The notes under the pieces: model-generated | The model's database searches: none | Seen by the model: only the letters and a program-made list of their open reading frames with translations | Told to the model about the DNA's origin: nothing | In this document: positions 13,878 to 59,060 of the stretch, piece after piece | Layout: every line of letters starts with the position of its first letter | Numbering within the stretch: position 1 is the stretch's first letter | Position numbers and translations under genes: made by a program | IMG/VR virus record: IMGVR_UViG_3300042540_001822 | Coordinates: 124,001-188,000 of that record | Direction: 5' to 3' (one strand) | DNA length: 64,000 nucleotides

Positions 13878-14390
13878 TTATTTCCAGTCAATTTTAGGAC
13901 AATACTTGTAATAGGTTGCTTTAACCATTTCAACAGTAATATTAGAACTTTTTTCTTCTTTCGGTAGATTTTTCCTCCCCCATTTTCTTTCTTTTCTTTC
14001 TTTTATTTTATCTTGGATGTATTCAATAAACCAAGCACAACCCCAAGTCAAACCTACCGCCCATACAAAAAAACCGTAAATAATTAAATTTTCTAAAATA
14101 GATCCTTTATGTGGTGTGTGCCAAAATAACATAATGGGACTGAGAGCTGCAATTAAAAGCAAAAGTATAAACCAAGAAATGAAACTTATCCAAATTCTAT
14201 TACCAAGTGATTCGTTATACGTATCTTTATCTATAATAACATAAGGAAGGGAAAAAATAAATAGTGGGATTGCGAATACATAAGCTATTACCAATTTCCA
14301 AAAGTATGGACATAAGTTGGTTGGAAGTTCACTTGTTCTGTAAAACCAACGGAAGAGTTTTGCTGAGATTGAGTTTTTGTTGAGTTTCAT
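13878..14390 (-). CDS. Multi-pass membrane protein (NLCPYFW; YYKYCPKIDW)
   Basis: Three hydrophobic segments. Confidence 0.8.
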   Translation of the reverse strand: MKLNKNSISAKLFRWFYRTSELPTNLCPYFWKLVIAYVFAIPLFIFSLPYVIIDKDTYNESLGNRIWISFISWFILLLLIAALSPIMLFWHTPHKGSILENLIIYGFFVWAVGLTWGCAWFIEYIQDKIKERKERKWGRKNLPKEEKSSNITVEMVKATYYKYCPKIDWK

Positions 14391-14761
14391 ACTTTTACAA
14401 GTTTAAATTTTTCACCACCAATTACAATTTCTTTACCTTCGCAAGATTTGGGTCGGTTGTCTTTGATTATACCTTTTGAATTCTCAAAGTAGATTAGATT
14501 ACCTTGAGAATCCCATTCCTGCTTTAACCAATACCCAGTTGAATCCTCAAAGTAGATTCTATTACCTTGAGAATCCCATTCCTTCTTTGCCCAATATTTC
14601 TTTGAATTCTCATAGTAGATTTCATTACCTTGAGAATCGTATTCACTCTTTACCCAACGTTTATTTGAATTCTCAAAGTAGATTTTTTTGCCATTCGTGT
14701 CTAGGATTACCAATGTACCATTGGTCTTGAAATCCCATTTAATTTGTTGTGCGATTGTCAT
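14387..14761 (-). CDS. Beta-repeat family member, 3 internal units, 124 aa
   Basis: xWxKxE(W/Y)DSQGNxIYxE(N/D)S repeats, YD/RHS-like. Confidence 0.9.
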   Translation of the reverse strand: MTIAQQIKWDFKTNGTLVILDTNGKKIYFENSNKRWVKSEYDSQGNEIYYENSKKYWAKKEWDSQGNRIYFEDSTGYWLKQEWDSQGNLIYFENSKGIIKDNRPKSCEGKEIVIGGEKFKLVKV

Positions 14762-15069
14762 ACTTTTACAAGTTTAAATTTTTCACCATCGATTTCTACT
14801 ACTTTATTTTCGCAAGATTTAGGTCGGTTGTCTATGATTTTACCATTTGAATTCTCATAGTAGATTCTATTACCTTGAGAATCCCATTCTCGTTTTGACC
14901 AATATCCATCTGAATCATGATAGTAGGTTTGGTTACCTTGAGAATCGTATTCACACTTTCCCCAATATCCATCTGAATTCTCATAGTAGATTCTATTACC
15001 ATTCTTGTCTTTAATTTCCAAGTAACCGTTGGTCTCAAAGTCCCAGTTGATTTGTTGTCCTATTGTCAT
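14758..15069 (-). CDS. Beta-repeat family member, 2 units, 103 aa
   Basis: Same family motifs. Confidence 0.9.
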   Translation of the reverse strand: MTIGQQINWDFETNGYLEIKDKNGNRIYYENSDGYWGKCEYDSQGNQTYYHDSDGYWSKREWDSQGNRIYYENSNGKIIDNRPKSCENKVVEIDGEKFKLVKV

Positions 15070-15314
15070 ACTTTTACAAGTTTAAATTTTTCACCATCGA
15101 TTTCTACTACTTTGTTTTCACAAGACTTGGGTCGGTTGTCTCTGATTACGCCATATGAATTCTCATAGTAGATTTCTTTTCCTTGGGAATCCCACTCCTT
15201 CTTTGACCAATGTCCATTTGAATTCTCCCAGTAGATTTCTTTACCATTCTTGTCTTTAATTTCCAAGTTACCGTTGGCCTTGAAATCCCATTTGATTTGT
15301 TGTGCGATTGTCAT
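15066..15314 (-). CDS. Beta-repeat family member, 1 unit, 82 aa
   Basis: Same family motifs. Confidence 0.9.
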   Translation of the reverse strand: MTIAQQIKWDFKANGNLEIKDKNGKEIYWENSNGHWSKKEWDSQGKEIYYENSYGVIRDNRPKSCENKVVEIDGEKFKLVKV

Positions 15315-15622
15315 ACTTTTACAAGTTTAAATTTTTCACCATCAATTACGATTTCTTTATTTTCACAAGGCTTGGGTCGGTTGTCTTTGATTACACCACG
15401 TGAATTCTCAAGGTAGATTTCATTCCCTTCAGAATCCCATTCCTCCTTTACCCAATCTCCCTTTGAATCCCCAGAGTAGATACAATAGCCATTAGAATCG
15501 TATTCTTGTTTTGTCCAATACCCATATGAAGCCTCTCGGTAGATTTCTTTACCATTCTTGTCTTTGATTACCAAGGAACCATTGGTTTCAAAGTCCCATT
15601 TGATTTGTTGTGCTATTGTCAT
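15311..15622 (-). CDS. Beta-repeat family member, 2 units, 103 aa
   Basis: Same family motifs. Confidence 0.9.
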   Translation of the reverse strand: MTIAQQIKWDFETNGSLVIKDKNGKEIYREASYGYWTKQEYDSNGYCIYSGDSKGDWVKEEWDSEGNEIYLENSRGVIKDNRPKPCENKEIVIDGEKFKLVKV

Positions 15623-16014
15623 ACTTTTACAAGTTTAAATTTTTCACCACCAATTACAATTTCTTTGTTTTCACAGGATTTGGGTCGGTAGTCTACGATT
15701 GCACCATCTGAATCCTCGTGGTAGATTATATTACCTTTAGAATCGTATTCCCACTTTCTCCAATCTCCCTTTGAATTCTCCCAGTAGATTAATTTACCTT
15801 GAGAATCGTATTCACACTTTACCCAAAATCCATCTGAATTCTCATAGTAGATTAGATTGCCTTGAGAATCCATTTCATACTTTCTCCAAGTCCCATGTGA
15901 ATCCTCAAAGTAGATTAGGTTGTCATTCTTGTCTCGGATTATCAAGTCACCATTGGTCTTGAAATCCCATTTGATTTGTCGTGCTATTGTTTCCATAATT
16001 TTTTTAATCTTCAA
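15619..16014 (-). CDS. Beta-repeat family member, 3 units (start possibly METIARQ)
   Basis: Same family motifs. Confidence 0.9.
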   Translation of the reverse strand: MKIKKIMETIARQIKWDFKTNGDLIIRDKNDNLIYFEDSHGTWRKYEMDSQGNLIYYENSDGFWVKCEYDSQGKLIYWENSKGDWRKWEYDSKGNIIYHEDSDGAIVDYRPKSCENKEIVIGGEKFKLVKV

Positions 16015-20430: not shown

Positions 20431-21531
20431 CTATTTTTCGTTTTTAAGAAGGAACTTGTTGCTAATTGCCTTGAAAGAAATGGTAGTGTCCATACTACGA
20501 ATGACCACTCCTTCCCGTTCAGTATTGGGATTTAGAACTGATTTTCCTTCTGCTTGTTGTAGAAGTTCTTCGATGGTGTCTGGTAGAAGAAACTCAATCC
20601 CGAGAATTGGCACGGTTTCGAATCCCAATAACTTCATTATGTTGATAAAATCTCGAAGGTTTAGTCTTTCCTGCTTATCAATGTCAAAAGCATTGTAGAA
20701 ACGAACGGTATGACCTTTGAGCTTGTAAGGATTCTTTTGAATTCCTTCTCCGATCAATTCTCCTTGGATGCAAATGTTAAGACCGGTTGCTAGTAACTTT
20801 TTCTTAATGTCCATTTCACGAGCTACTTTCCAGAAAGTGTTTTCCTGCTTCGGTCTTTCCAAGCCATCTTCACACATTACAGTGCCAGGTACAAAATCTC
20901 CGGGGTCAGCAAGTTCCAGGTTGCGAGAGCAGACCCCAAATTCACCGTCCTTGATGTAGAATGTAGCAGAACTCCCATCCAACTTTTCAGTTGCATAGAA
21001 CTGGTGTTTGCTGGAGAACTTCCATTCCTCGTATTCCTTGGTTAGATTCTGCACCCTCTCTTCATCGGTCTTACGGATAAAAGATGGGAAGTAGCCTTTG
21101 ACCTTGCCGGCCAGCTCGGCAGGAACTGGCGGCTCGTACTTGACAATGTTCAACATTTCTGTAACATCTAGTCCTTCGAACCAGCCCATATCCAGGTTAG
21201 GAGTGCTACGTTTGTAGATCGCATAGGAATCTGCCAATGGTAGGATGAGACCTTGTGATACTTGCCCGCGAAGTTTGATCGTCTTCAATCGAAATCCTTC
21301 AGATCCGTCAGACATTTTTTTATACGAGCTCTTCCGAAGAAACTCAAACTCTGGCTCAATTGGCAAGTAAGAGTCGATCTCGCAATAGACTACAAGATCT
21401 CCCTCTTTGTGGCCTACGTTTTTGCCAACCACCACTTGCCAGGAATTGATGATTGCCAGTTCAATGGAGTCTGCTCCTTCGATTGGTCGAATCTCACGGA
21501 TTCTTTGTATGCTTGCTAATTTTCTTTCCAT
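20431..21531 (-). CDS. ATP-dependent RNA ligase (DRB0094/Rnl5-like) with N-terminal OB-like domain
   Basis: RKLASIQRI...ADSIE; TEKLDGSS (motif I), QGELIG, FYNAFD, REGVV, FKAISNKFL. Confidence 0.92.
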   Translation of the reverse strand: MERKLASIQRIREIRPIEGADSIELAIINSWQVVVGKNVGHKEGDLVVYCEIDSYLPIEPEFEFLRKSSYKKMSDGSEGFRLKTIKLRGQVSQGLILPLADSYAIYKRSTPNLDMGWFEGLDVTEMLNIVKYEPPVPAELAGKVKGYFPSFIRKTDEERVQNLTKEYEEWKFSSKHQFYATEKLDGSSATFYIKDGEFGVCSRNLELADPGDFVPGTVMCEDGLERPKQENTFWKVAREMDIKKKLLATGLNICIQGELIGEGIQKNPYKLKGHTVRFYNAFDIDKQERLNLRDFINIMKLLGFETVPILGIEFLLPDTIEELLQQAEGKSVLNPNTEREGVVIRSMDTTISFKAISNKFLLKNEK

Positions 21532-24485: not shown

Positions 24486-25117
24486 TGTTTAGTTTGTTTG
24501 ATTAAAGTTCTATTCAATTTTCCATAGTTTGATTCACCGTCAAAAGCTCTACCAATACGGTACAAATGTTTAGGTGATAATCCAAAGTAACCATCACAAT
24601 GATAAAATTTATCCATTTGTTCTGGAAGCATATCAGAGTCATCATCTAAAATTGCATAATCCTCAACTTCAGGATTTTTATCTAACCATTGCTGTATTTC
24701 TTCTCCCCTCATACCAAACCCCCTTCCAGTAATCCCAACAAAAGTTCCCTCATTAAATCCAAAATGTACCAAAGCATCTTCCCACCACTCTGGAATTAAT
24801 TCTTTTTTCTTACCAAAATGATGTCTCCAAACAGATGAAACACAAATTTTAGTTCCAGTTTCATTACAAAAATTAGAAAGCCATTTCCATTTTTGTGGAC
24901 AAGTTTCTCCAATCAACCTTTTAAGCTGAAATTCGTAGGTGTAGTAAATATCGGGTGTTTTGTGATTTGCATAACTCACAGGTTTTGATTTGATACCTAA
25001 AAACTTTCTGATTAAGTAGTAGTAAGTCCTGGGTTTCAACCACCTTTTTTTGTGTCGGTTCTCGTAAAAAACTTCAGAGTTCATAACCCCATCAATATCT
25101 AAAAATATAACTTTCAT
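24482..25117 (-). CDS. HAD phosphatase of the Swiss-Army-knife RNA-repair type
   Basis: VIFLDIDGVMN, ICVSSVWR, RGEEIQQWL, YAILDDDSDM. Confidence 0.82.
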   Translation of the reverse strand: MKVIFLDIDGVMNSEVFYENRHKKRWLKPRTYYYLIRKFLGIKSKPVSYANHKTPDIYYTYEFQLKRLIGETCPQKWKWLSNFCNETGTKICVSSVWRHHFGKKKELIPEWWEDALVHFGFNEGTFVGITGRGFGMRGEEIQQWLDKNPEVEDYAILDDDSDMLPEQMDKFYHCDGYFGLSPKHLYRIGRAFDGESNYGKLNRTLIKQTKQ

Positions 25118-25425
25118 ACTTTTACAAGTTTAAAATTTTCGCCATCGATTAGGATTTCTTTGTTTTCGCAAGACTTAGGTCGGTTGTCTATGATTAGACC
25201 ACCTGAATCCTCAAAGTAGATTTTATTACCTTGAGAATCGTATTCTCGTTTAGCCCAAACTCCATCTGAATCCTCAACGTAGATTAGATTGCCTTGAGAA
25301 TCATATTCACACTTTTCCCAATATCCATTTAAATGCTCATAATAGATTTCATTACCATTCTTGTCTCGGATTACCAAGAGACCATTGGTCTTGAAGTTCC
25401 ATTTAATTTTTTGTGCGATTGTCAT
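25114..25425 (-). CDS. Beta-repeat family member, 103 aa
   Basis: Family motifs. Confidence 0.9.
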   Translation of the reverse strand: MTIAQKIKWNFKTNGLLVIRDKNGNEIYYEHLNGYWEKCEYDSQGNLIYVEDSDGVWAKREYDSQGNKIYFEDSGGLIIDNRPKSCENKEILIDGENFKLVKV

Positions 25426-25874
25426 ACTTTCACGAGTTTAAATTTTTCACCACCAATTAGGATTTCTTTGTTTTCACAAGGCTTGGGTCGGTAGTCTATG
25501 ATTTCACCATATGAATTCTCATAGTAGATTACATTACCATTCTTGTCTTTGATTTCCTTTAAGTTACCGTTGGCCTTGAAGTTCCATTTGACACTGGCCT
25601 TGAAGTTCCATTTGGCACAGGGTTTAGGTCGATCGTCTCTGATTTGGCCAACTGAATTTTCAAAGTAGATTACATTGCCTTGAGAATCCCATTCTCGTTT
25701 TGACCAATACCCATTTGAATCCTCCAAGTAGATTTGATTACCTTGAGAATCCCGTTCATACTTTTCCCAAAACCTATTTGAATCCTCAAAGTAGATTAGA
25801 TTATCATTCTTGTCTTGGATGTTCAAGCATCCATTGGTCTCAAAATCCCATTTGATTTGTTGTGCTATTGTCAT
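25422..25874 (-). CDS. Beta-repeat family member, chimeric, 150 aa (partial second copy fused in frame)
   Basis: RPKPCAKWNFKASVKWNFKANGNL...; 24-bp tandem repeat at 25571-25618. Confidence 0.88.
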   Translation of the reverse strand: MTIAQQIKWDFETNGCLNIQDKNDNLIYFEDSNRFWEKYERDSQGNQIYLEDSNGYWSKREWDSQGNVIYFENSVGQIRDDRPKPCAKWNFKASVKWNFKANGNLKEIKDKNGNVIYYENSYGEIIDYRPKPCENKEILIGGEKFKLVKV

Positions 25875-26185
25875 ACTTTCACGAGTTTAAATTTTTCACC
25901 ATCGATTTCTACTACTTTGTTTTCACAGGGTTTGGGTCGTTTGTCTTTGATTACACCTTTTGAATTCTCATAGTAGATTTCTTTACCTTGAGAATCCCAT
26001 TCTTGTTTTTCCCAATATCCATCTGAATTCTCATAGTAGATTAATTTTTCTTCAGAATTGTATTCATGCCTGTCCCAACCTCCCGTATTTTCAAAGTAGA
26101 TTAGATTACCATTCTTGTCTCGGATTTCCAAGACACCGTTGGTCTTGAAATCCCATTTGATTTGTTGTGCTATTGTCTGTATCAT
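25871..26185 (-). CDS. Beta-repeat family member, 104 aa
   Basis: Family motifs. Confidence 0.9.
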   Translation of the reverse strand: MIQTIAQQIKWDFKTNGVLEIRDKNGNLIYFENTGGWDRHEYNSEEKLIYYENSDGYWEKQEWDSQGKEIYYENSKGVIKDKRPKPCENKVVEIDGEKFKLVKV

Positions 26186-26523
26186 ACTTTTACAAGTTTA
26201 TATTTTCCACCAGGTGCAAACATAGAAAAAAGACCTAAGCCTTTAAATTCTACTACTTTACCTTCACAGGGCTTGGGTCGGCTGTCTATGATTTCACCAT
26301 ATGAATTCTCATAGTAGATTACTTTTCCTTCAGAATCCAGTTCCCACTTTCTCCAAGTCCCATGTGAATACTCCAAGTAGATCAATTTACCTTGAGAATC
26401 CCATTCATACTTTTCCCAAACTCCATCTGAATTCTCCAGGTAGATTGGTTTACCATTCTTGTCTCGGATTACCAAGAGACCATTGGTCTTGAAATCCCAT
26501 TTGATTTGCTGTGCTATCGTCAT
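26182..26523 (-). CDS. Beta-repeat family member, 113 aa, with C-cap insertion (GLGLFSMFAP)
   Basis: Family motifs. Confidence 0.9.
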   Translation of the reverse strand: MTIAQQIKWDFKTNGLLVIRDKNGKPIYLENSDGVWEKYEWDSQGKLIYLEYSHGTWRKWELDSEGKVIYYENSYGEIIDSRPKPCEGKVVEFKGLGLFSMFAPGGKYKLVKV

Positions 26524-26828
26524 ACTTTCACGAGTTTAAATTTTTCACCACCAAATTCTACTATCTTACCTTCACAAGACTTAGGTCGTTTGTCTTTAAT
26601 TAGACCATCTGAATTCTCATAATAGATTTCATTGCCTTCAGAATCGTATTCATGCTTTCTCCAATATCCCATTGAATTCTCACAGTAGATTTCTTTGCCT
26701 TTAGAATTCCGTTCCCACTTTGCCCAATATCCATCTAAATCCTCAAAGTAGATTATTTTACCATTCTTGTCTAGGATATCCAAGTCACCATTAGTGAAGT
26801 CCCATTTGATTTGTTGTGCTATTGTCAT
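26520..26828 (-). CDS. Beta-repeat family member, 102 aa
   Basis: Family motifs. Confidence 0.9.
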   Translation of the reverse strand: MTIAQQIKWDFTNGDLDILDKNGKIIYFEDLDGYWAKWERNSKGKEIYCENSMGYWRKHEYDSEGNEIYYENSDGLIKDKRPKSCEGKIVEFGGEKFKLVKV

Positions 26829-27076
26829 ACTTTCACTAGTTTATATTTTTCACCTTCAAATTCTACTATCTTACCTTCACAGGGCTTGGGTCGTTTGTCT
26901 ATGATTCTACCAAATGAATTCTCCCTGTAGATTAGATTGCCTTGAGAATCGTATTCGCTCTTTTCCCAAACCCTATTTGAATCCTCCCAGTAGATTAGTT
27001 TACCATTATTGTCTTTGATTCTCAATTCATCATTGGTCCTGAAATCCCATTTGATTTGTTGTGCTACTGTTTTCAT
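26825..27076 (-). CDS. Beta-repeat family member, 83 aa, 1 unit
   Basis: Family motifs. Confidence 0.9.
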   Translation of the reverse strand: MKTVAQQIKWDFRTNDELRIKDNNGKLIYWEDSNRVWEKSEYDSQGNLIYRENSFGRIIDKRPKPCEGKIVEFEGEKYKLVKV

Positions 27077-27384
27077 ACTTTTACAAGTTTAAATTTTTCA
27101 CCACCGATTAGGATTTCTTTGTTTTCACAAGATTTGGGTCGTTTGTCTGCGATTACACCATTTGAATCCTCACAGTAGATTACATTACCTTGAGAATCGA
27201 ATTCATACTTTGCCCAAAGTCCTTTTGAATCCTCCATGTAGATTAGATTGTCTTGAGAATCGTATTCACGCTTTGCCCAAAATCCACTTGAAGTCTCAAA
27301 GTAGATTAGGGAATCATTCTTGTCTCGGATTTGCAAGACGCCATTGGTCTTGAAATCCCACTTGATTTGTTGTGCTATTGTCAT
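27073..27384 (-). CDS. Beta-repeat family member, 103 aa
   Basis: Family motifs. Confidence 0.9.
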   Translation of the reverse strand: MTIAQQIKWDFKTNGVLQIRDKNDSLIYFETSSGFWAKREYDSQDNLIYMEDSKGLWAKYEFDSQGNVIYCEDSNGVIADKRPKSCENKEILIGGEKFKLVKV

Positions 27385-50342: not shown

Positions 50343-50364
50343 TTTCAATTATTTAAAATTTTTG

Positions 50365-50449
50365 CGGAGAGGGAGGGATTCGAACCCCCGGATCCTTGCG
50401 GATCGGCTGTTTTCAAGACAGCTCTCGTAAACCACTTGAGTACCTCTCC
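50365..50449 (-). tRNA. tRNA-Ser, anticodon TGA; CCA not encoded
   Basis: Acceptor GGAGAGG/CCTCTCC; anticodon arm GCTGT-CTTGAAA-ACAGC; long variable arm GATCC-GCAA-GGATC; T-loop TTCGAAT. Confidence 0.95.
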
Positions 50450-51875: not shown

Positions 51876-51906
51876 AAAAAAAAAAGTTTGTCCGAAGACA
51901 AACTTT
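51876..51906 (-). terminator. Intrinsic terminator after tmRNA
   Basis: AAAGTTTGTC-TTCG-GACAAACTTT followed by U-tract. Confidence 0.85.
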
Positions 51907-51910
51907 GTTG

Positions 51911-52347
51911 TGGAGCTGGGCGGATTCGAACCGCCGTCCTGTTAGGTAGATCTTGGAAACTCATTCACAGGCTTAGTCTATTTTTATAAACAGACAAATC
52001 TTTACCTCCTAGTTTTTGACTGTGATAGGAGATAATCCACAGCGTCTTCCCTTACAGCGATCTGAAGGGTATTGGGCCGGAGCCCGCAGGGTTACTGAGG
52101 GTCGACGAATTTTGTGGTACTATTAACCCTTTTTCCCACAATTGTGACTTTCTGTTCCTGGGCGTCACCTCCCGGTGTTTAGGCTGCCAAGGCAACTTCA
52201 ACCGACTCCACTGAACCTAGTCCAGCAAGAGCAAAAAATGGATTTTCGCCATTTGAAAAGTACTTAGGATATTTAGGTGCTTCCAAAGCTAGCACCGCCT
52301 GCATCATGTCAAAGAACTTGTTCCTCCAGTCGATTCCTGTCAGCCCC
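51911..52347 (-). ncRNA. ssrA: tmRNA, 437 nt; tag reading frame 52250-52179 = (A)GENPFFALAGLGSVESVEVALAA*
   Basis: 5' GGGGCTGACAGGAATCGAC; acceptor GGGGCTG/CAGCTCC with G3:U; T-arm GGCGG-TTCGAAT-CCGCC; tag ends ALAA-stop. Confidence 0.95.
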
Positions 52348-52382: not shown

Positions 52383-52775
52383 TCATAATTTGACCTCAAA
52401 TCTTTTCGCCATAGCATCTAACTTGTCAGAAGGAACTCCGTGAACATTTTCACCCATGTGTCGGTTTTCTACGATCGCGGTGGAAACCAGATAACCGAAT
52501 TTTTCGGCCATTTGAAAATAAGGTTCCATTTCCCATTCCTGTGTAAATGTATTTGATACGATAATTAAAGGGTGGTCCAAAAACATCCAATCTTTAACCA
52601 TTGTTTGGCACCACTCGTGAGCCTGCTTTAATTTGTCACCTTGGAATTTATATTCTCCATCTACCATGAAAAATTGGTCAGCTTCAACGTGAAAAACCCC
52701 ATAACCTCCTAACCTTTTGGCCAAAGTTGATTTACCAGATCCGGGCAAACCCCGGAGTAAAAGAAGTGTATTCAT
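52383..52775 (-). CDS. P-loop kinase (AAA_33 / polynucleotide-kinase-like)
   Basis: LLRGLPGSGKSTLA, EADQFF, IIVSNTF..EWEMEPY. Confidence 0.85.
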   Translation of the reverse strand: MNTLLLLRGLPGSGKSTLAKRLGGYGVFHVEADQFFMVDGEYKFQGDKLKQAHEWCQTMVKDWMFLDHPLIIVSNTFTQEWEMEPYFQMAEKFGYLVSTAIVENRHMGENVHGVPSDKLDAMAKRFEVKL

Positions 52776-52788
52776 GATTTAAATTTGT

Positions 52789-53463
52789 TTAATTGGTTTT
52801 CTTTGTGATTACCCCATCGATGATTCCATAGGCCTTGGCTTCCTCGGCATCGAGCCAAAAATCACGGGTTGCGTCCTCCTGAACCTTTGCCGGATCCTTA
52901 CCACAAAAATCACCAAGTAGTTCAAATAGGATTTTATTCACCTTTTCCCATTCTTGAAAGTCAATTTTTGCGTCCTGGATGTTTCCTTCGAAGCCTCCAG
53001 AAGATTGGTGCAACATCACCTTAGAGAAGCGAAGAGAAAATCTTTTTCCCTTGGTCCCAGCACCTAATAGCACAGATCCCATAGAAGCTGCCATGCCCGT
53101 GTTGATTGTGGAGATGTCAGATTTAATGTACTGCATGACATCCACCATTGAAAGTCCAGATTTAACCGATCCCCCTGGTGAATCGATGTGCATTGTGATG
53201 TCCCTTTCATCAACGGAATCTAAAAACATCAGCTGTGCCTGAACTACTGTCGACATGGAATCACGGACCGGACCTGCCACCCATAAAATTCTGTCCATCA
53301 TGAGTCTTGAAAAAATGTCCAATTGTGTCACCCGAAGTTCTCTTTCTTCTAGAATGTAGGGGGTTAGTGAGCTTTGAACTTGTTTTTCATAGTAGTCCAA
53401 AGTGGAGGAACTAATTCCTTGAGATAGGGAGAATTTTTGAAATTCCGAAAAAAGTTTTGACAT
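52789..53463 (-). CDS. clpP: ATP-dependent Clp protease proteolytic subunit
   Basis: DIFSRLMMDRI, IDSPGGSV, AASMGS, MLHQ, RDFWL.AEEAKAYG. Confidence 0.96.
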   Translation of the reverse strand: MSKLFSEFQKFSLSQGISSSTLDYYEKQVQSSLTPYILEERELRVTQLDIFSRLMMDRILWVAGPVRDSMSTVVQAQLMFLDSVDERDITMHIDSPGGSVKSGLSMVDVMQYIKSDISTINTGMAASMGSVLLGAGTKGKRFSLRFSKVMLHQSSGGFEGNIQDAKIDFQEWEKVNKILFELLGDFCGKDPAKVQEDATRDFWLDAEEAKAYGIIDGVITKKTN

Positions 53464-53662: not shown

Positions 53663-53974
53663 TTAAATCAAAGAGGTGTTTACTGTTCTATTTGCAACCC
53701 CGGCTATTCCTGGAAAAGAAGAAAAAACGTTGGTCATATCTTTAATCGTCGTGTCCCAAGGAGAATGGCTTTCGTTAAATCTGACCATAGGATAAAATAC
53801 TGGTGATTCGTAATTTCCACCCCGGATTGGCATTTTGCACCTGACTGGCGGGTGACTAACCGCCTGTAAATAAAAAACTGCAGATCCATCTGGAGTAAAT
53901 CGAATTTCGGACACCTCAATGTCACTTCTCTCTTTTCCAGTGAGAAAATTTTTTAACTCGTCTCTGAAGTTCAT
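53663..53974 (-). CDS. Hypothetical protein
   Basis: ORF track. Confidence 0.65.
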   Translation of the reverse strand: MNFRDELKNFLTGKERSDIEVSEIRFTPDGSAVFYLQAVSHPPVRCKMPIRGGNYESPVFYPMVRFNESHSPWDTTIKDMTNVFSSFPGIAGVANRTVNTSLI

Positions 53975-54255
53975 AATTCTGAAGTGTGTTTTTGAATGAG
54001 ATCCTGATAAAAACCTTCGGGTTTCAAACCTTTAACGTTTTCTAAAACTGAATTTTCTTTCATAAATAAAACCGTAGGCAAAGATCTAATTCCAAATTCC
54101 GCTGTTCTTTCCTTATTTTCATCAACGTTAATTTTCACAATTTCAACGTTTGGATTTTTTGATTTTAAATTTTCTAAAATTGGATTAAGCATACGGCAGG
54201 GTCCACACCATTCGGCATAAAAATCTAAAATTGTAAGTGGAGTAGGGTTTGACAT
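53971..54255 (-). CDS. trxA: Thioredoxin
   Basis: DFYAEWCGPCRML, IRSLPT. Confidence 0.95.
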   Translation of the reverse strand: MSNPTPLTILDFYAEWCGPCRMLNPILENLKSKNPNVEIVKINVDENKERTAEFGIRSLPTVLFMKENSVLENVKGLKPEGFYQDLIQKHTSEL

Positions 54256-54300
54256 AAAAGTTTTTAAAATATTAGATAAAATAGAAAAAATTGTTTCTTT

Positions 54301-54621
54301 TCAATAAACAATAGTTTGTGTCATATCTGGATTTGTTCTGTAAATTACCTCGGGACCAGGTGACATGATAACTGAAAGTTCATCTGACAGTGTTTGCAAA
54401 CTTTGGATAAAATTTTGAACGTCGTCTTTTTTGGAAGCGGGAAAATTAAAATGAGTCATAACATCATTAGTCAGGGACTCAATAGAATCATCAAATTGCC
54501 CGGCATCATGAAAATCCATGTCCTTTTCATATTTTGAAACGAAGTCTTTGATTTCGTCCTGTTCTACCTGTGACAAAGAAAGATTCGACACAAAATCATC
54601 AAATTCTAGAATTCTTTTCAT
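54301..54621 (-). CDS. Hypothetical protein with MKRILEFDDFV N-terminus, possible internal head protein
   Basis: ORF track; (TA)n element at 54637-54650. Confidence 0.75.
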   Translation of the reverse strand: MKRILEFDDFVSNLSLSQVEQDEIKDFVSKYEKDMDFHDAGQFDDSIESLTNDVMTHFNFPASKKDDVQNFIQSLQTLSDELSVIMSPGPEVIYRTNPDMTQTIVY

Positions 54622-55308: not shown

Positions 55309-56781
55309 TTAAATTGATTCGAATTTTATACCTCCATGAGGCATTCCTTTTGTTTTAAGTGGTCTGTAACCTTTCATTTCGTCTGTAACTACGAATGCCT
55401 TATGAGGATTAACCATTACCCCCATTCTTTTCATTAAACCTCTATTTGCCAAAAAAGGAGTGCTTTTTTGAATTCTGTCAGTAGGTGCAACCTTAACATC
55501 GGAAATTTTAACTCCATTGAGCATCAAATCCAATGATATAATAGGTCTTTTTTCTTTTTCCCTTCCAATTTCAGTGTTTGTGTAACCTATAATTTCATCT
55601 GCGAAAGTATTTTCACCTATTTTCCAATATAGAACTCCATTTTTTTCCTCCAATTCATCAGCGTGAATCGAAGAGGCTGAAGATCCATTACCAGTGTCAA
55701 ATTTTGCCACCATTTTACCAATTCTGGGAATATCTAAAGTTTCTAAATAGCCAACCTCCATTTTGCTATAGCTCCAATTATTCTTGTCTATAACATAGTC
55801 AATAACATCTCCAACAATAGGTCTTCCAATTGCCTGAGAAATACCTTCTGTTCCAGGAGAAGAATTGACCTCCAAAATGTAGGGTTTACCCGATTCAGCA
55901 TCAATCATGATGTCTACTCCACACCAGTGGCTTCCGACTGCATTAGCGGCTTCACAAGCGAGAGCTGCTGTTTCTTCGTCGATATCATAGGATGAAACCT
56001 GCCCTCCCAAAGAGTAATTAGTTCTAAAGTCTTTTTCAACAGCTTCTCTTTTCATGGAACCGAGAATGGTGTAATTTCCTTTTTTTGAAATAAGTGGATC
56101 GAATCTTTTAACGATTACCTGAATTCTAAGATCAAAATTAGAATTAATCTTTTCTTGTATCAAAATTTCCTTTTCCGGGTCTAGCTTTGCTATGGTCTGA
56201 TAAACCGACTTTAAAGAAGCATAAGAATCAACAATCGAAACTCCAATTCCCTGGGTCCCAGACAGTAATTTCATAACGACAGGAAATTTACCTCCAATCT
56301 GCTCCAAAGCGGAATCTAGATTGTCTTCCCCGTTGACTAATGCGTATCTAGGAACGGGTAAACCCTCACCCTCCAAAATCCGGGAGGTAAGAAATTTGCT
56401 TTCACAAATCTCAATTGATTCTAAAGAGTTAACGCAAAAATATCTAGATGCCTCCAAATCTCTCATGATTTGTTTGGTGTAGGAGTTGGTAATAACTCCT
56501 CTCCGAGGAATAATTGCAGTTTTATCTGGTTTAATTAGAATTTCTTTGCCATCTTTTTTTCCTTCACGAACCATGTGTCCGTTGTAAATTTTTTCCAACG
56601 TTATGTTGTTTATGTCCACCACGTTGCAGACGATTCCCCGATTTTCACACTCGGCCATAAAAGATTTAGAGGTAGGGCTGGGTTTGGCGGTACCGGACAG
56701 GATAAGAATTTCTACCCCATCTGAGGACTCGGATTCATTCAAGAAGGTTGAAAAATTAACAACAGAAGGAGCAAAGGACAT
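55309..56781 (-). CDS. RimK-family ATP-grasp ligase fused to a C-terminal retropepsin-like (RimB/DUF785-type) protease; start moved to MSFAPS
   Basis: SKFLT..IL...GLPVP, FPVVMK...GTQGIGV, IQEKI, DLRI, FRTNYSLGG, GVDIM, LEVNSSPG; then AKFDTGNG...SSIHA. Confidence 0.88.
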   Translation of the reverse strand: MSFAPSVVNFSTFLNESESSDGVEILILSGTAKPSPTSKSFMAECENRGIVCNVVDINNITLEKIYNGHMVREGKKDGKEILIKPDKTAIIPRRGVITNSYTKQIMRDLEASRYFCVNSLESIEICESKFLTSRILEGEGLPVPRYALVNGEDNLDSALEQIGGKFPVVMKLLSGTQGIGVSIVDSYASLKSVYQTIAKLDPEKEILIQEKINSNFDLRIQVIVKRFDPLISKKGNYTILGSMKREAVEKDFRTNYSLGGQVSSYDIDEETAALACEAANAVGSHWCGVDIMIDAESGKPYILEVNSSPGTEGISQAIGRPIVGDVIDYVIDKNNWSYSKMEVGYLETLDIPRIGKMVAKFDTGNGSSASSIHADELEEKNGVLYWKIGENTFADEIIGYTNTEIGREKEKRPIISLDLMLNGVKISDVKVAPTDRIQKSTPFLANRGLMKRMGVMVNPHKAFVVTDEMKGYRPLKTKGMPHGGIKFESI

Positions 56782-56810
56782 GAAAGTGGGAAGAAATTTT
56801 TCCTTATATA

Positions 56811-57440
56811 TCACTTTTTTTCAACAAACTCTGTAAAATAATGTTGATCTGTCTCGAAATTTGTTTTATTTTCTACCGAATAAACATTCATATCAATTTT
56901 GTAACCAGGATTTTTTTCTATCCTCTTAAATGTCCACGCATTATCCATCCAAATTATTCTATTATTTGGATAGATGAAATAATTTCCATTGTCCATCTTG
57001 AAAACGTGTCCACATTTGTGTTCTGGTGTTTCTGAAAAATTGGTATCTAATAAGGATCTATTTTCAAAAGACCAATCAAGAGTAAAAAGGTAAATCCCCT
57101 GTCTTTTTAAACCCGAAATTGAAATTAAATCTGCTCTTAATCCGCTCATTCTTGCCCTCACCTGAACATCGATGTACGAGCTAAAGCAATCCCAATAAAT
57201 ATGCTCGCTTAAAGGCAATAATTCAGCATCCTTTTTCCAACAAAAAGCGTTAATGGGTCTTCTTGTCCAATTGACCCCATTTTCCAAAAAAGCTTCAAAT
57301 AATGGAACTCTTTTTTCAATCGAAGCAACCGAATGAACATCTGCTAAGGTAAAATCACCGTGTCCTTTTTCGTGGTTAAATAAAAATTCATTTCTGATGA
57401 AACAGGTCAGAGTTGGGATGTTGTGATTTAGATAGGGCAT
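56811..57440 (-). CDS. Conserved phage hypothetical protein
   Basis: 209-aa ORF (YLNHNIP...WDCFS...YPNNRIIW). Confidence 0.8.
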   Translation of the reverse strand: MPYLNHNIPTLTCFIRNEFLFNHEKGHGDFTLADVHSVASIEKRVPLFEAFLENGVNWTRRPINAFCWKKDAELLPLSEHIYWDCFSSYIDVQVRARMSGLRADLISISGLKRQGIYLFTLDWSFENRSLLDTNFSETPEHKCGHVFKMDNGNYFIYPNNRIIWMDNAWTFKRIEKNPGYKIDMNVYSVENKTNFETDQHYFTEFVEKK

Positions 57441-57893: not shown

Positions 57894-59060
57894 TTAAAAA
57901 AGAGTATTAATCATGAAAAGGTTGGGAGAAATCGGGTGGTGACCCATTACTTCTATGAAGCGGTTGATTGGATCTAAAATTGTTTTGGTGAACTGTTGGT
58001 CTAAATCCACCGGAGGAGCATACTCGTAAGGGTAATTTCCTTGAGAATAGGCAAAAACATTGTTTTCCTGTGGATTATTGGTTTTAACAAAGTAAAATCT
58101 AACTTTTTCTCCGCTTCCTAACAGGGGATATTTGTCCTTGTACTTCGAGTTGTTTAGTATGTAATTATGATAGCCAGAAGCTCTGACGTGAATAGGGGTA
58201 GCCTTGGCAAATTCGAAACCTGTGGTGTCGTTTAAAATGAACTTCTCGTAGTTGTTAACCGAAATAGCCAAGGCGATCCGTTCTGGTTCCTGGGCTTTAA
58301 AATCTTTCTTGATTGATTTTAACTCTGTAACGAACTCCCTAATGTTGAAAGACCTACCTTTCGTTAAAATAAACTTAGTTAAGTACATTAGCTTCTCACG
58401 AACAAAGGCAGGTGTGCCTCCTTTTATCATCTCAACTCCAGTGGTTTTGATGTTGCTTAGAGGTTCGAACTCCACACCATCTGAGTAAACTGTGTTCGTA
58501 ACATATTTTTTCTTGCCAAGAAAGATGGCATTAATCGACAAGGTCTCAAGTTCGAAATCCTGATAGTTTTCCGTGTTCCATTTTTTGGCGTAAATCTCAA
58601 AGCACTTTTTAAGATAACCTTTTAATCTAAATTCATTGATTTTTAAAATCAATTCCTTTGGATCTCCTTGCCAGTTACAAGACGCCACGACTTCCTGAAA
58701 TGTTACATAATTGGAGTCAGTATCACCATAGATAGTTAAGGGCCGGTGTACCTTCTTGACATCGGTGACTCCTAGTTTTTCATGAAGATCGACATCATCG
58801 TGCCAGAAATCGTGAAAGTATCTATGAATAATTTTTTCTGAATACTTGATTAAATCCTGTCCCTGAAGAGTAACTGCTTCTGCAACGTCTGTATTAAAGC
58901 AAGCAAAGAAATTATTTCCTACCGCTCCATAGATGGAGTTCATCGTTAACTTTACGGCTTGTTCCTCGTTCTTGAGCTCATTCTTTAGGGAGGTGAGCTC
59001 TTCTATTTTTAATTTTAGTTCTTTCGCATTTAGATTATGTGGTTCCATTCTTGTTCCCAA
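57894..59060 (-). CDS. Family-B DNA polymerase, C-terminal subunit only (split polymerase)
   Basis: KLTMNSIYG (motif B), AVTLQGQ, YGDTDS (motif C), KKKY; no exonuclease domain or motif A. Confidence 0.9.
   Translation of the reverse strand: MGTRMEPHNLNAKELKLKIEELTSLKNELKNEEQAVKLTMNSIYGAVGNNFFACFNTDVAEAVTLQGQDLIKYSEKIIHRYFHDFWHDDVDLHEKLGVTDVKKVHRPLTIYGDTDSNYVTFQEVVASCNWQGDPKELILKINEFRLKGYLKKCFEIYAKKWNTENYQDFELETLSINAIFLGKKKYVTNTVYSDGVEFEPLSNIKTTGVEMIKGGTPAFVREKLMYLTKFILTKGRSFNIREFVTELKSIKKDFKAQEPERIALAISVNNYEKFILNDTTGFEFAKATPIHVRASGYHNYILNNSKYKDKYPLLGSGEKVRFYFVKTNNPQENNVFAYSQGNYPYEYAPPVDLDQQFTKTILDPINRFIEVMGHHPISPNLFMINTLF

What the first reader, a model, noticed from the sequence alone, without database searches (positions are those of the whole stretch)
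52179..52250. Phage tmRNA with a double-length degradation tag, close to a phage ClpP
Seen: the tag frame reads (A)GENPFFALAGLGSVESVEVALAA*, 23 codons. Established: Bacteroidota tags are about 9-10 aa of the GE(N/T)NYALAA type. The first 10 residues resemble a whole host tag but continue into a second segment ending VALAA. clpP lies ~440 bp away and thioredoxin follows. Inference: a phage ribosome-rescue and proteolysis module whose extended tag may redirect substrates to phage ClpP or a different adaptor.
Basis: partly seen in the sequence, partly recalled or inferred. Interest (0 to 1): 0.7.

Follow-up and report, generated by a model that had tools for sequence, protein, structure and literature searches.

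The report
Phage tmRNA with a long tag
A large freshwater phage carries its own, actively expressed ribosome-rescue RNA (tmRNA) whose built-in degradation tag is 23 codons long, against 8-10 in every host-phylum bacterium sampled; the longer tag would let experiments tell phage-made tags from host-made ones.

Summary
A one-piece tmRNA lies on the minus strand at 51908-52347 (Rfam 67.2 bits, cut-off 47). Its tag frame is 52250-52179, GENPFFALAGLGSVESVEVALAA plus UAA.

- **Frame:** ARAGORN's tag call is wrong. The Rfam alignment, PK1 spacing, an A at -4 and homology to Bacteroidota tags all place the resume codon at GGC.
- **Conservation:** 39 copies from viral and metagenome contigs are all exactly 23 codons. 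They show mostly synonymous change; Leu8 uses five codons.
- **Expression:** Six lake metatranscriptomes hold contigs matching only the tmRNA. DNA runs cover the flanks evenly.
- **Host contrast:** 79 of 79 chromosomal tmRNAs sampled from the host order and phylum have 8-10-codon tags. This tmRNA type occurs almost only on viral contigs. Sister viral types have 23-40-codon tags.
- **Origin:** The first half is homologous to a host tag. An indel put the ancestral TAG out of frame.
- **ClpP link:** ClpP is a cellular-type enzyme, often but not always upstream in relatives. The phage has no SmpB or Clp unfoldase, and ClpP does not read tags. The 'redirect to phage ClpP' idea is therefore untested and imprecise as worded.

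This is a new variant of a known kind. Interest 0.6.

The parts
51908..52347 (-). One-piece tmRNA (ssrA) gene, about 438-440 nt
   Evidence: ARAGORN. Rfam RF00023 67.2 bits, full model 1-374. The acceptor stem has G3:U, and the T-arm and P2 are in the consensus fold with compensatory pairs. RNA contigs of 394-432 nt cover 51910/51911-52339 in 6 metatranscriptomes.
52262..52296 (-). Pseudoknot PK1 (tmRNA positions 52-86)
   Evidence: Stem 1 is GGUGCU/AGCACC, with 3 compensatory pairs against relatives. Stem 2 is GCUUUGG/CCUAAGU, against GCAUUGG/CCUAUGU in relatives.
52251..52261 (-). Single-stranded spacer upstream of the resume codon, with A at -4 (52254)
   Evidence: It is 11-12 nt long between PK1 and GGC. 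The A at -4 is present in 20 of 20 aligned family members.
52179..52250 (-). Tag reading frame: resume codon GGC, 23 codons (GENPFFALAGLGSVESVEVALAA), stop UAA at 52181-52179
   Evidence: The length is invariant in 39 copies, change is mostly synonymous, and the conserved blocks are GENPFF[A/V]LAGLGS and EVALAA with variable residues 14-17.
52206..52230 (-). Hairpin inside the tag frame, homologous to helix 5 of host tmRNAs. Its loop still holds a TAG (52219-52217), now out of frame.
   Evidence: Rfam aligns it to the model's stop-codon helix. It has two compensatory pairs, both made by synonymous codon changes. Alignment to host-type tmRNAs shows GCTG-CCTAG against GCTGGACTAG.
51883..51906 (-). 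Intrinsic terminator directly after the tmRNA 3' end
   Evidence: 10-bp stem, 4-nt loop and a T-run. RNA contigs end at 51910/51911.
52383..52775 (-). 130-aa P-loop protein (AAA_33; phage ATPase / polynucleotide-kinase-like), 35 nt upstream of the tmRNA
   Evidence: Pfam PF13671 3.7e-12. phrog_2071 2.9e-39. It lies next to the tmRNA in 11 of 38 metagenome loci.
52789..53463 (-). Cellular-type ClpP proteolytic subunit (224 aa)
   Evidence: Pfam PF00574 1.3e-58. NF011091 scores 249 bits against 66 bits for the ClpP-related head-maturation model. PDB ClpP 8r04 matches at E 2.7e-48, with the AASMG, HQ and RD motifs aligned. It is 53% identical to the ClpP of the putative host MAG.
53663..54621 (-). 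Conserved block: hypothetical 103 aa (53663-53974), thioredoxin (53971-54255), hypothetical 106 aa (54301-54621)
   Evidence: Pfam thioredoxin 3.5e-22. Synteny is conserved in G004:C32 and in metagenome loci. The two small proteins have no assignable family.
55309..56814 (-). RimK-like ATP-grasp ligase (501 aa), the first gene of the conserved block
   Evidence: Pfam RimK 2.9e-32. phrog_2599. It is 70-92% identical in relatives, in the same order.
50364..50449 (-). tRNA-Ser (anticodon TGA), 1.5 kb downstream of the tmRNA
   Evidence: ARAGORN. Rfam tRNA 53 bits.

Best explanation
This is a functional, phage-encoded one-piece tmRNA.

Shown here:
- It has all the tRNA-like and mRNA-like features of a tmRNA.
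- It accumulates as a discrete RNA of about 430-440 nt in lakes.
- Its 23-codon tag frame is under protein-level selection.
- It belongs to a tmRNA lineage found almost only on viral contigs, while bacteria of the host phylum use 8-10-codon tags.

Inferred mechanism:
1. The RNA is made during infection. Its 5' end is trimmed by RNase P, and CCA is added, because the gene encodes ACAA rather than ACCA.
2. Host AlaRS charges it with alanine, via the G3:U pair.
3. Host SmpB and EF-Tu deliver it to ribosomes stalled on broken or non-stop mRNAs. Such mRNAs should be plentiful once the phage degrades host transcripts.
4. Translation resumes at GGC and appends A-GENPFFALAGLGSVESVEVALAA.
5. The host-like C-terminal ALAA is read by the host ClpX or ClpA unfoldase. 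The substrate is then fed into ClpP, for which the phage supplies its own cellular-type subunit. This frees ribosomes and recycles amino acids.
6. The conserved N-terminal block GENPFF[A/V]LAGLGS, separated from EVALAA by a variable 4-residue linker, most likely forms a second recognition element, making the degron bipartite. It could bind an adaptor or a second protease, or improve engagement.

Evolutionary origin (inferred): a host-type tag in which a 1-nt indel pushed the ancestral TAG out of frame. The frame then ran on to a new UAA and acquired a new ALAA end.

The confidence given is for the whole chain. For 'a real, expressed, virus-borne tmRNA with a translated 23-codon tag' alone I would say about 0.85. 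For the specific role of the N-terminal block, about 0.25.
For: - **tmRNA identity and structure:**
- **Resume codon:** Rfam alignment, PK1 spacing, A at -4 in 20 of 20, nucleotide homology to host tag starts.
- **Coding selection:** 8 synonymous and 3 non-synonymous codon differences between the window and L048/L065/L117. Differences by codon position are 3/2/9. All 39 copies are 72 nt, and Leu8 uses 5 codons. Identity by codon position is 0.90/0.91/0.72, and the tag is as conserved as the tRNA-like domain (0.84 against 0.87-0.90), while the PK2-PK4 region is at 0.60-0.62.
- **Expression:** tmRNA-only contigs in 6 of 6 metatranscriptomes, with even coverage in DNA runs. A terminator follows the gene.
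- **Viral, not host:** the gene is internal to a 219 kb virus record. The 3'-end signature occurs in 25 viral contigs and in 1 contig among 185,579 species genomes. That one contig is syntenic with the window, and its MAG has a separate host tmRNA with the tag GESNYALAA.
- **Host tags:** 8-10 codons in 79 of 79.
- **Dependence on host factors:** no SmpB and no Clp unfoldase in the record.
- **ClpP:** cellular type with catalytic motifs.
- **Stop-loss origin:**
Against: - No direct evidence of aminoacylation, tagging or degradation; steps 1-6 are inference.
- The record is only 88% complete, so SmpB or an unfoldase could lie in the missing part.
- I found no capsid or terminase gene in the 219 kb. 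'Phage' therefore rests on the IMG/VR classification and many PHROG replication and lysis matches.
- ClpP linkage is not universal (L235, L246), and all linked loci are related, so the linkage is not independent evidence of a functional tie.
- Codons 1-5 and 22-24 of the metagenome copies were fixed by my search pattern, so their invariance is not evidence.
- The host is only tentatively Bacteroidota/Saprospirales (MAG binning; tag homology).
Confidence: 0.6

Rival explanations
1. The extension is a neutral by-product of stop-codon loss. Only the terminal ALAA matters, and the extra 14 residues are a tolerated spacer with no function of their own.
For: The first half aligns to a host tag, and a 1-nt indel explains the read-through. 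Residues 14-17 vary freely.
Against: The length is invariant in 39 copies even though my pattern allowed 40-52 nt in the middle. Residues 6-13 and 18-21 are held at the protein level through many synonymous changes. Sister viral tmRNAs have 23-40-codon tags with their own conserved motif, SLxGLxIDWHLA, and the same third-position bias.
Confidence: 0.15
2. The long tag switches protease or adaptor. The N-terminal block recruits Lon, FtsH or an unidentified phage or host adaptor, as the extended Mycoplasma/Mesoplasma tags are read by Lon. Phage-tagged proteins would then follow a different route from host-tagged ones.
For: The architecture is bipartite, with a variable linker. The block is aromatic and hydrophobic, the whole tag has no basic residues, and sister tags are acidic and aromatic. 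Extended tags read by Lon are a known precedent (own knowledge; Mesoplasma florum tag and Lon systems are used in PMC9097571 and PMC10873288). Conserved small proteins of unknown function sit next to ClpP.
Against: The host-like ALAA terminus is retained, and it is the ClpX determinant in studied systems. No adaptor-like family was found for the neighbouring proteins. The complex prediction gave no answer.
Confidence: 0.2
3. The true resume codon lies downstream, for example at GGA-CUA-GGU, so the real tag is of ordinary length and the upstream codons are untranslated.
For: ARAGORN does not call this frame. There is no direct protein evidence.
Against: The Rfam alignment puts the resume codon at GGC. 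PK1 sits 11-12 nt upstream and the A at -4 is conserved. Codons 6-13 show synonymous-only or conservative change, with Leu8 using 5 codons. The start GGC-GAA-AAT is homologous to host tag starts.
Confidence: 0.05
4. The RNA acts mainly as a decoy or sensor, titrating host SmpB or competing with host tmRNA, and tagging is incidental.
For: A phage tmRNA reduced to the tRNA-like domain exists (DS6A), and such molecules can inhibit tmRNA (PMC4131195). The phage lacks SmpB.
Against: The mRNA-like domain and the tag are complete and under coding selection. That is not expected if tagging were irrelevant.
Confidence: 0.05
5. The tmRNA is not a phage gene. It would be a host ssrA at a prophage edge, or a mis-assembled or mis-binned host fragment.
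For: Host tmRNA genes are common integration sites. Four host-type 9-codon tmRNAs in my viral sample sit at contig ends.
Against: This gene is internal, at about 176 kb of 219 kb, flanked on both sides by genes shared with other viral contigs. A 41 kb DNA contig from an independent run spans it. 117 of 121 host-phylum genomes have a single tmRNA of 349-405 nt, and none has this type except on the phage-like contig.
Confidence: 0.03

Closest known systems
Chromosomal one-piece tmRNA of Bacteroidota (tags such as GENNYALAA, GESNYALAA, GEYNYAMAA)
   Same: Same overall architecture. The resume context (AAT/ATT then GGC GAA), the tag start G-E-N and the ALAA end are shared. The first 10 codons and the helix-5 hairpin align at nucleotide level.
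   Different: The tag is 23 codons rather than 8-10. The gene is 438-440 nt rather than 349-405 nt. The 3' region carries CUGUGAAUGA where hosts have AUGUAGAAAG. It is carried on viral contigs.
Known phage tmRNAs: Bxz1-type mycobacteriophages, Bacillus phage G, huge phages, OM43 phage Melnitz (PMC4131195, PMC7162821, PMC9004378)
   Same: A complete tmRNA carried by a large lytic-type phage without SmpB. The roles proposed for those phages (keeping translation running, recycling amino acids) apply here too.
   Different: None of the papers I could search discusses tag length against the host. Melnitz has a two-piece tmRNA with a riboswitch. No GenBank phage matches this tmRNA beyond the generic 30-nt 3' end. 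Some phage tmRNAs in my sample have ordinary tags (ANSQSAFALAA), so long tags are a trait of this lineage, not of phage tmRNAs in general.
Extended ssrA tags of Mycoplasma/Mesoplasma, read by Lon (about 27 residues; length from my own knowledge; systems used in PMC9097571 and PMC10873288, context in PMC8403727)
   Same: The tag is far longer than the usual 10-11 residues, with recognition determinants plausibly spread along it.
   Different: Those organisms lack ClpXP and their tags do not end in LAA. Here the ALAA end is kept and a ClpP is supplied by the phage. Here the long tag belongs to the virus, not to the cell.
Bipartite E. coli and Caulobacter ssrA tags: an SspB-binding N-terminal part plus a ClpX-binding LAA end (established knowledge)
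   Same: There are two conserved blocks, and the C-terminal one is the unfoldase determinant. A bipartite reading of the phage tag follows this model.
   Different: No SspB-like adaptor was identified in the phage. The N-terminal block is unrelated in sequence, and the two blocks are separated by a variable 4-residue linker.

Membership tests
tmRNA (Rfam RF00023, one-piece) | Covariance-model score above the family's gathering threshold over the full model | tested here: met
   67.2 bits against 47, model positions 1-374. Relatives score 94 bits.
tmRNA (Rfam RF00023, one-piece) | tRNA-like domain: 7-bp acceptor stem with a G3:U pair (alanine identity), T-arm, discriminator A and 3' CCA | tested here: met
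   Pairs 1-7/439-445 include GU at 3:443, and the T-arm has 2 compensatory pairs. The gene encodes ACAA, so CCA must be added after transcription. RNA contigs end at 51910/51911.
tmRNA (Rfam RF00023, one-piece) | PK1 immediately upstream of a resume codon, with the conserved upstream A | tested here: met
   Both PK1 stems have compensatory changes, the spacer is 11-12 nt, and the A at -4 is present in 20 of 20.
tmRNA (Rfam RF00023, one-piece) | Short open frame without a start codon, conserved as protein, ending in hydrophobic residues (typically ALAA) and a stop | tested here: met
   23 codons ending in ALAA-UAA, with a coding signature across 39 copies. The length is atypical for the host phylum.
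tmRNA (Rfam RF00023, one-piece) | Pseudoknots PK2-PK4 downstream of the tag | tested here: inconclusive
   RNAalifold cannot model pseudoknots. Several downstream helices have compensatory pairs, but this region is the least conserved (0.60-0.62) and I did not assign PK2-PK4.
tmRNA (Rfam RF00023, one-piece) | Accumulates as a stable small RNA | tested here: met
   Contigs of 394-432 nt confined to the gene in 6 of 6 metatranscriptomes, with flanks at about zero. DNA runs cover the stretch evenly.
tmRNA (Rfam RF00023, one-piece) | Works with SmpB; is charged with alanine; tags proteins on stalled ribosomes | not testable with these tools
   No SmpB in the 219 kb record, so host SmpB would be needed. 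There are no biochemical data.
ClpP (ATP-dependent Clp protease proteolytic subunit, Pfam PF00574) | Full-length match to the family above its threshold, closer to cellular ClpP than to ClpP-like prohead proteases | tested here: met
   PF00574 198 bits, positions 6-181 of 182. NF011091 249 bits, which is below its equivalog cut-off of 361, against NF045542 head-maturation at 66 bits, below its cut-off of 120.
ClpP (ATP-dependent Clp protease proteolytic subunit, Pfam PF00574) | Ser-His-Asp catalytic residues | tested here: met
   The AASMG, HQ and RD motifs align with those of solved ClpP 8r04_A. The assignment of these motifs to the triad is from established knowledge of ClpP.
ClpP (ATP-dependent Clp protease proteolytic subunit, Pfam PF00574) | Partner AAA+ unfoldase (ClpX, ClpA or ClpC) | tested here: not met
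   No AAA_2-type unfoldase in the virus record. A host unfoldase would be required. Whether this ClpP docks to it was not testable.
   ClpP is on the same contig in 5 of 5 close relatives. It is upstream on the same strand in 13 of 38 metagenome loci, and in 6 of the 7 with at least 8.2 kb upstream. It is absent from the block in L235 and L246, and found in only 1 of 5 contigs of the sister clade. All linked loci are related phages, so this is synteny, not independent co-occurrence.

The most novel reading that the evidence does not exclude
A virus-restricted tmRNA lineage has evolved extended, bipartite tags: 23 codons here, 35-40 in a sister clade with the conserved motif SLxGLxIDWHLA. These tags would mark the products of phage-driven trans-translation as distinct from host-tagged proteins. 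They would route those products through a phage-controlled pathway, either phage ClpP with a host unfoldase or a yet unidentified adaptor or second protease. Alternatively, they would give the tagged proteins a role other than simple disposal.
Probability: 0.2. Interest if true: 0.8.

Novelty: new variant of a known kind. Interest (0 to 1): 0.6.

Why it matters
Why phages carry tmRNAs is unresolved, and the published ideas (keeping hijacked ribosomes running, recycling amino acids) have not been tested directly. A phage tag that differs in length and sequence from the host's is a natural barcode. In infected cells, mass spectrometry could separate proteins tagged by the phage tmRNA from those tagged by the host tmRNA, showing what the phage RNA acts on and when.

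The conserved extra block also gives a defined peptide with which to look for a new adaptor or protease specificity.

There is a practical point as well. ARAGORN, the tool used in the huge-phage surveys, mis-calls or truncates these tags. Tag lengths in existing phage annotations of this lineage are therefore unreliable.

Tried and rejected
1. **ARAGORN's tag** (VPQNSS...RSL). Rejected: no hydrophobic end, wrong position relative to PK1, and not conserved.
2. **ClpP as a prohead protease.** Rejected: the cellular ClpP models score far higher than the head-maturation models, and the gene sits among replication and metabolism genes.
3. **Stop-codon recoding as the reason for a phage tmRNA** (suppressor tRNAs cause read-through and stalling). 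Rejected: the record has only tRNA-Met, tRNA-Arg and tRNA-Ser, with no suppressor. Recoding TAG or TGA barely raises ORF coverage.
4. **A phage adaptor next to ClpP.** Pfam, PHROGs, NCBIfam and the ESM Atlas gave nothing for the 103-aa and 106-aa proteins. The complex prediction of the 103-aa protein with the tag returned 'no answer', which is evidence neither way.
5. **A cultured relative.** No GenBank phage matches either long-tag tmRNA type beyond the generic 3' end. An exact 5'-end pattern found nothing in viral contigs.
6. **Virion hallmark genes.** Terminase_6N, Terminase_6C and Gp23 models found nothing (the Gp23 control rang nowhere). PHROG scans of the 30 largest ORFs found none. This leaves a caveat, not a refutation of viral origin.
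7. **'Internal duplication of the tag'.** The two halves share only the ALA motif. Nucleotide similarity is too short to show duplication, so I prefer stop loss by indel.
8. **ClpP co-occurrence in the 35-40-codon clade.** Only 1 of 5 fragmentary contigs had ClpP: inconclusive.
Full report
**What is there.** ARAGORN and Rfam both find a one-piece tmRNA on the minus strand at 51908-52347. Rfam scores it at 67.2 bits against a gathering score of 47. The window is bases 124001-188000 of a 219,475-bp IMG/VR virus record that CheckV rates 88% complete.

GGC at 52250 opens 23 codons reading GENPFFALAGLGSVESVEVALAA, followed by UAA at 52181-52179. ARAGORN reports a different tag further downstream (VPQNSS...RSL), which has none of the properties of a tag.

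**The resume codon.** Four independent lines place it at GGC.
- The Rfam alignment puts the model's resume codon there with high posterior probability.
- PK1 lies just upstream. Stem 1 (GGUGCU/AGCACC) has three compensatory pairs against relatives. Stem 2 (GCUUUGG/CCUAAGU) has one. The spacer to GGC is 11-12 nt.
- An A stands at -4 in all 20 aligned family members. An A at the equivalent position in E. coli is important for frame selection (PMC2481249, abstract, plus my own knowledge).
- The start GGC-GAA-AAT aligns at nucleotide level with the starts of Bacteroidota tags.

**The frame is translated, by comparative evidence.**
- Three viral or MAG contigs (L048, L065, L117) carry tmRNAs 66-77% identical to this one. 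Their tag is GENPFFVLAGLGSVETAEVALAA. Of the 11 codons that differ from the window, 8 are synonymous. Nucleotide differences fall 3/2/9 on codon positions 1/2/3.
- A metagenome scan anchored on the first 17 and last 9 nt of the frame found 38 more contigs. All 39 copies are exactly 72 nt although the pattern allowed 40-52 nt in the middle. There are 15 nucleotide versions and 8 peptide versions.
- Leu8 is written with five different Leu codons. Codons 6, 9, 13, 20 and 21 change only synonymously.
- Amino-acid change is concentrated at residues 14-17, with A/V at residue 7 and a rare G/V at residue 12.
- This gives two conserved blocks, GENPFF[A/V]LAGLGS and EVALAA, joined by a variable linker.
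- Codons 1-5 and 22-24 were fixed by my search pattern, so their invariance in that set proves nothing.
- Over 21 distinct complete tmRNAs, the unanchored part of the tag is 0.84 identical pairwise (0.90/0.91/0.72 by codon position). That is as conserved as the tRNA-like domain (0.87-0.90) and much more conserved than the region downstream of the tag (0.60-0.62).

**Expression.**
- The phage recurs in many lake and freshwater metagenomes from several studies.
- In six of six metatranscriptome runs, the assembled contigs that match this 2.2 kb stretch cover the tmRNA almost end to end (51910/51911 to 52339). They are 394-432 nt long; in one run the coverage comes from two overlapping pieces.
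- The flanking protein genes have essentially no RNA coverage. Two DNA runs cover the whole stretch evenly, one with a single 41 kb contig. The flanks serve as the silent control that the tool asks for.
- The RNA 3' ends coincide with the discriminator position, and an intrinsic terminator follows at 51906-51883.
- No variant in any RNA contig falls inside the tag frame.
- Loose ends in the same runs match the L065-type tmRNA, so relatives are expressed too.

**Viral, not host.**
- The 3'-end signature of this tmRNA (CUGUGAAUGA at a fixed distance from the T-arm) occurs in 25 IMG/VR contigs. It occurs in only one contig among one-genome-per-species representatives of 185,579 species.
- That contig (C32 of a Saprospirales MAG) is syntenic with the window. 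RimK is 70% identical, thioredoxin 41% and ClpP 77%, in the same order, with the tmRNA downstream.
- The same MAG has a second, ordinary tmRNA of 377 nt with the tag GESNYALAA.
- In the viral sample, the four host-type 9-codon tmRNAs all sit at contig ends, as expected for host ssrA genes used as integration sites. The long-tag ones are internal.
- Relatives L006, L080 and L094 share several genes with the window at 55-60% identity.
- Caveat: I could not identify a capsid or terminase gene in the 219 kb. What I found is a T4-like replication and nucleotide-metabolism set plus lysis-type domains.

**Host-lineage tags.**
- In the order of the MAG, 29 of 29 ARAGORN-called tmRNAs have 9-codon tags of the form GxxNYA[L/M]AA.
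- In a sample of 121 genomes from the phylum, 117 have a single tmRNA of 349-405 nt. The only second copy is the phage-type one on C32. Fifty of 50 tags read are 8-10 codons.
- Across all bacteria, tags of 8-35 residues are known (PMC8012679). The length is unusual for this phylum, not unprecedented in biology.

**Origin of the extension.**
- Against host-type tmRNAs, the window reads GGC GAA AAT ... GCT CTT GCT GGA CTA GG where hosts read GGC GAA AAT ... GCT CTC GCT GCC TAG. There is one extra codon early on, then a 1-nt indel that puts the ancestral TAG out of frame.
- Rfam aligns this spot to helix 5, whose loop normally holds the stop codon.
- The hairpin is still there, with two compensatory pairs made by synonymous changes, and the out-of-frame TAG is invariant in the loop.
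- The frame then runs on to a new UAA inside another hairpin and ends again in ALAA.

**A wider pattern.** These calls are comparative inferences, not measurements.
- The same 3'-end family contains two further kinds of tag when read from the aligned resume codon.
- The first kind has 23-24 codons: DEKSTFTFEDAMSFVGADLAVAA in L080 and L094, and a related tag in L006.
- The second kind has 35-40 codons, for example GDNSLDGLVIDWHLAGAEMGFDNYVEESVSDSQPTYAYAA.
- In the second kind, the N-terminal extension with the motif SLxGLxIDWHLA shows differences of 105/49/229 by codon position. It is therefore probably translated as well. ARAGORN reports only the tail of these tags or misses the genes.
- Another genome of the order (G012) has a second 430-nt tmRNA with a probable 31-codon tag.
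- Not all phage tmRNAs are like this. Others in the sample have 10-11-codon tags.

**Neighbourhood.**
- Upstream on the same strand lie RimK-like ligase, a 106-aa protein, thioredoxin, a 103-aa protein, ClpP and an AAA_33 P-loop protein, followed by the tmRNA.
- ClpP is of the cellular type, with the catalytic motifs in place. It is 53% identical to the MAG's own ClpP, against 77% between the window and C32 phage copies.
- ClpP is on the same contig in 5 of 5 close relatives. It is upstream on the same strand in 13 of 38 metagenome loci, at either about 0.44 kb or about 5.5-7.5 kb from the tmRNA 5' end. Among the 7 loci with at least 8.2 kb of upstream sequence, 6 have it.
- Two loci have the block without ClpP. 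The sister clade shows ClpP in only 1 of 5 fragments.
- The record has no SmpB and no Clp-type unfoldase.

**How it most likely works.**
- Shown: a complete, expressed, virus-borne tmRNA with a selected 23-codon tag that ends like the host's.
- Inferred: it uses host AlaRS, SmpB and EF-Tu to rescue ribosomes stalled on damaged mRNAs during infection. It appends a 24-residue tail. The ALAA end is read by the host ClpX or ClpA, which feeds ClpP, including the phage's own subunit.
- The conserved N-terminal block is best read as a second recognition element in a bipartite degron. Its partner is unknown.
A different adaptor or protease remains possible but untested.

**Comparison and novelty.** Phage tmRNAs are known (PMC4131195, PMC7162821; 2.3% of phage genomes in PMC9004378). 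Long tags are known in some bacteria. In the literature I could search and in GenBank phages, I found no description of a virus-restricted tmRNA lineage whose tags are 2.5 to 4 times the host's, conserved and expressed. I rate it a new variant of a known kind.

Noticed in passing
L027, L032, L033, L036, L067, L071, L093, L095, L100, L108, L114, L115, L116 (viral contigs): A sister clade of viral tmRNAs whose tags, read from the aligned resume codon, are 35-40 codons long and share the motif SLxGLxIDWHLA. They end in YAYAA or YANA. Third-codon-position change dominates in the extension. ARAGORN calls only the last 10-25 residues or misses the genes.
   Followed up: partly
L162 (G012:C38:22819-23248): A genome of the putative host order has a second, 430-nt tmRNA on a 30 kb contig. 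ARAGORN does not detect it. Its probable tag is 31 codons, DNSKSLYQSNAGFILGFMSMVGLQQTEDALA. This may be another phage-borne long-tag tmRNA.
   Followed up: partly
window 51910-51939: In DNA run X6 the contigs break at the tmRNA 3' end, and one carries different sequence beyond it. This looks like a strain-level mosaic junction, or possibly a recombination or integration point, exactly at the tmRNA 3' end.
   Followed up: no
window 14390-16014 and 25117-27384, minus strand: At least eleven tandem ORFs of about 83-150 aa are paralogues of one another; all hit the same region of L094 (1515-1889). This is an expanded small-protein family of unknown function.
   Followed up: no
window 20431-21531 and 52383-52775: A T4-type RNA ligase (phrog_968, 4e-92) and a polynucleotide-kinase-like P-loop protein are both present. 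Together with the tRNAs and the tmRNA, this suggests an RNA-repair capacity, a possible counter to host tRNA or mRNA nucleases.
   Followed up: no
window 55309-56814: A RimK-like ATP-grasp ligase with a weak C-terminal match to a zinc-protease domain is conserved at 70-92% identity at the head of the block that ends with ClpP and the tmRNA. RimK modifies ribosomal protein S6 in bacteria, so the block may be a translation and proteostasis takeover island.
   Followed up: no
window 57894-59060; G000 116324-117538 and 202487-204055: Three separate ORFs match family B DNA polymerase families and lie far apart in the record. They may be a split polymerase or several polymerases.
   Followed up: no
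whole record G000 (219,475 bp): No capsid, portal or terminase gene was recognised among the 30 largest ORFs or by three Pfam models. The largest standard-code ORF is 821 aa. The region from 20 to 80 kb has low long-ORF coverage that recoding TAG or TGA does not rescue.
   Followed up: partly
L235 and L246 (metagenome contigs): Relatives have the RimK / thioredoxin / 103-aa block and the tmRNA, but no detectable ClpP between them. ClpP has been lost or replaced there while the long-tag tmRNA is kept.
   Followed up: no
window 51956-51998 and 52055-52098, RNA runs X15-X19: Many other metatranscriptome contigs match only these short conserved tmRNA segments and then diverge. Several related tmRNAs of this viral family are therefore expressed in the same lakes.
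   Followed up: no
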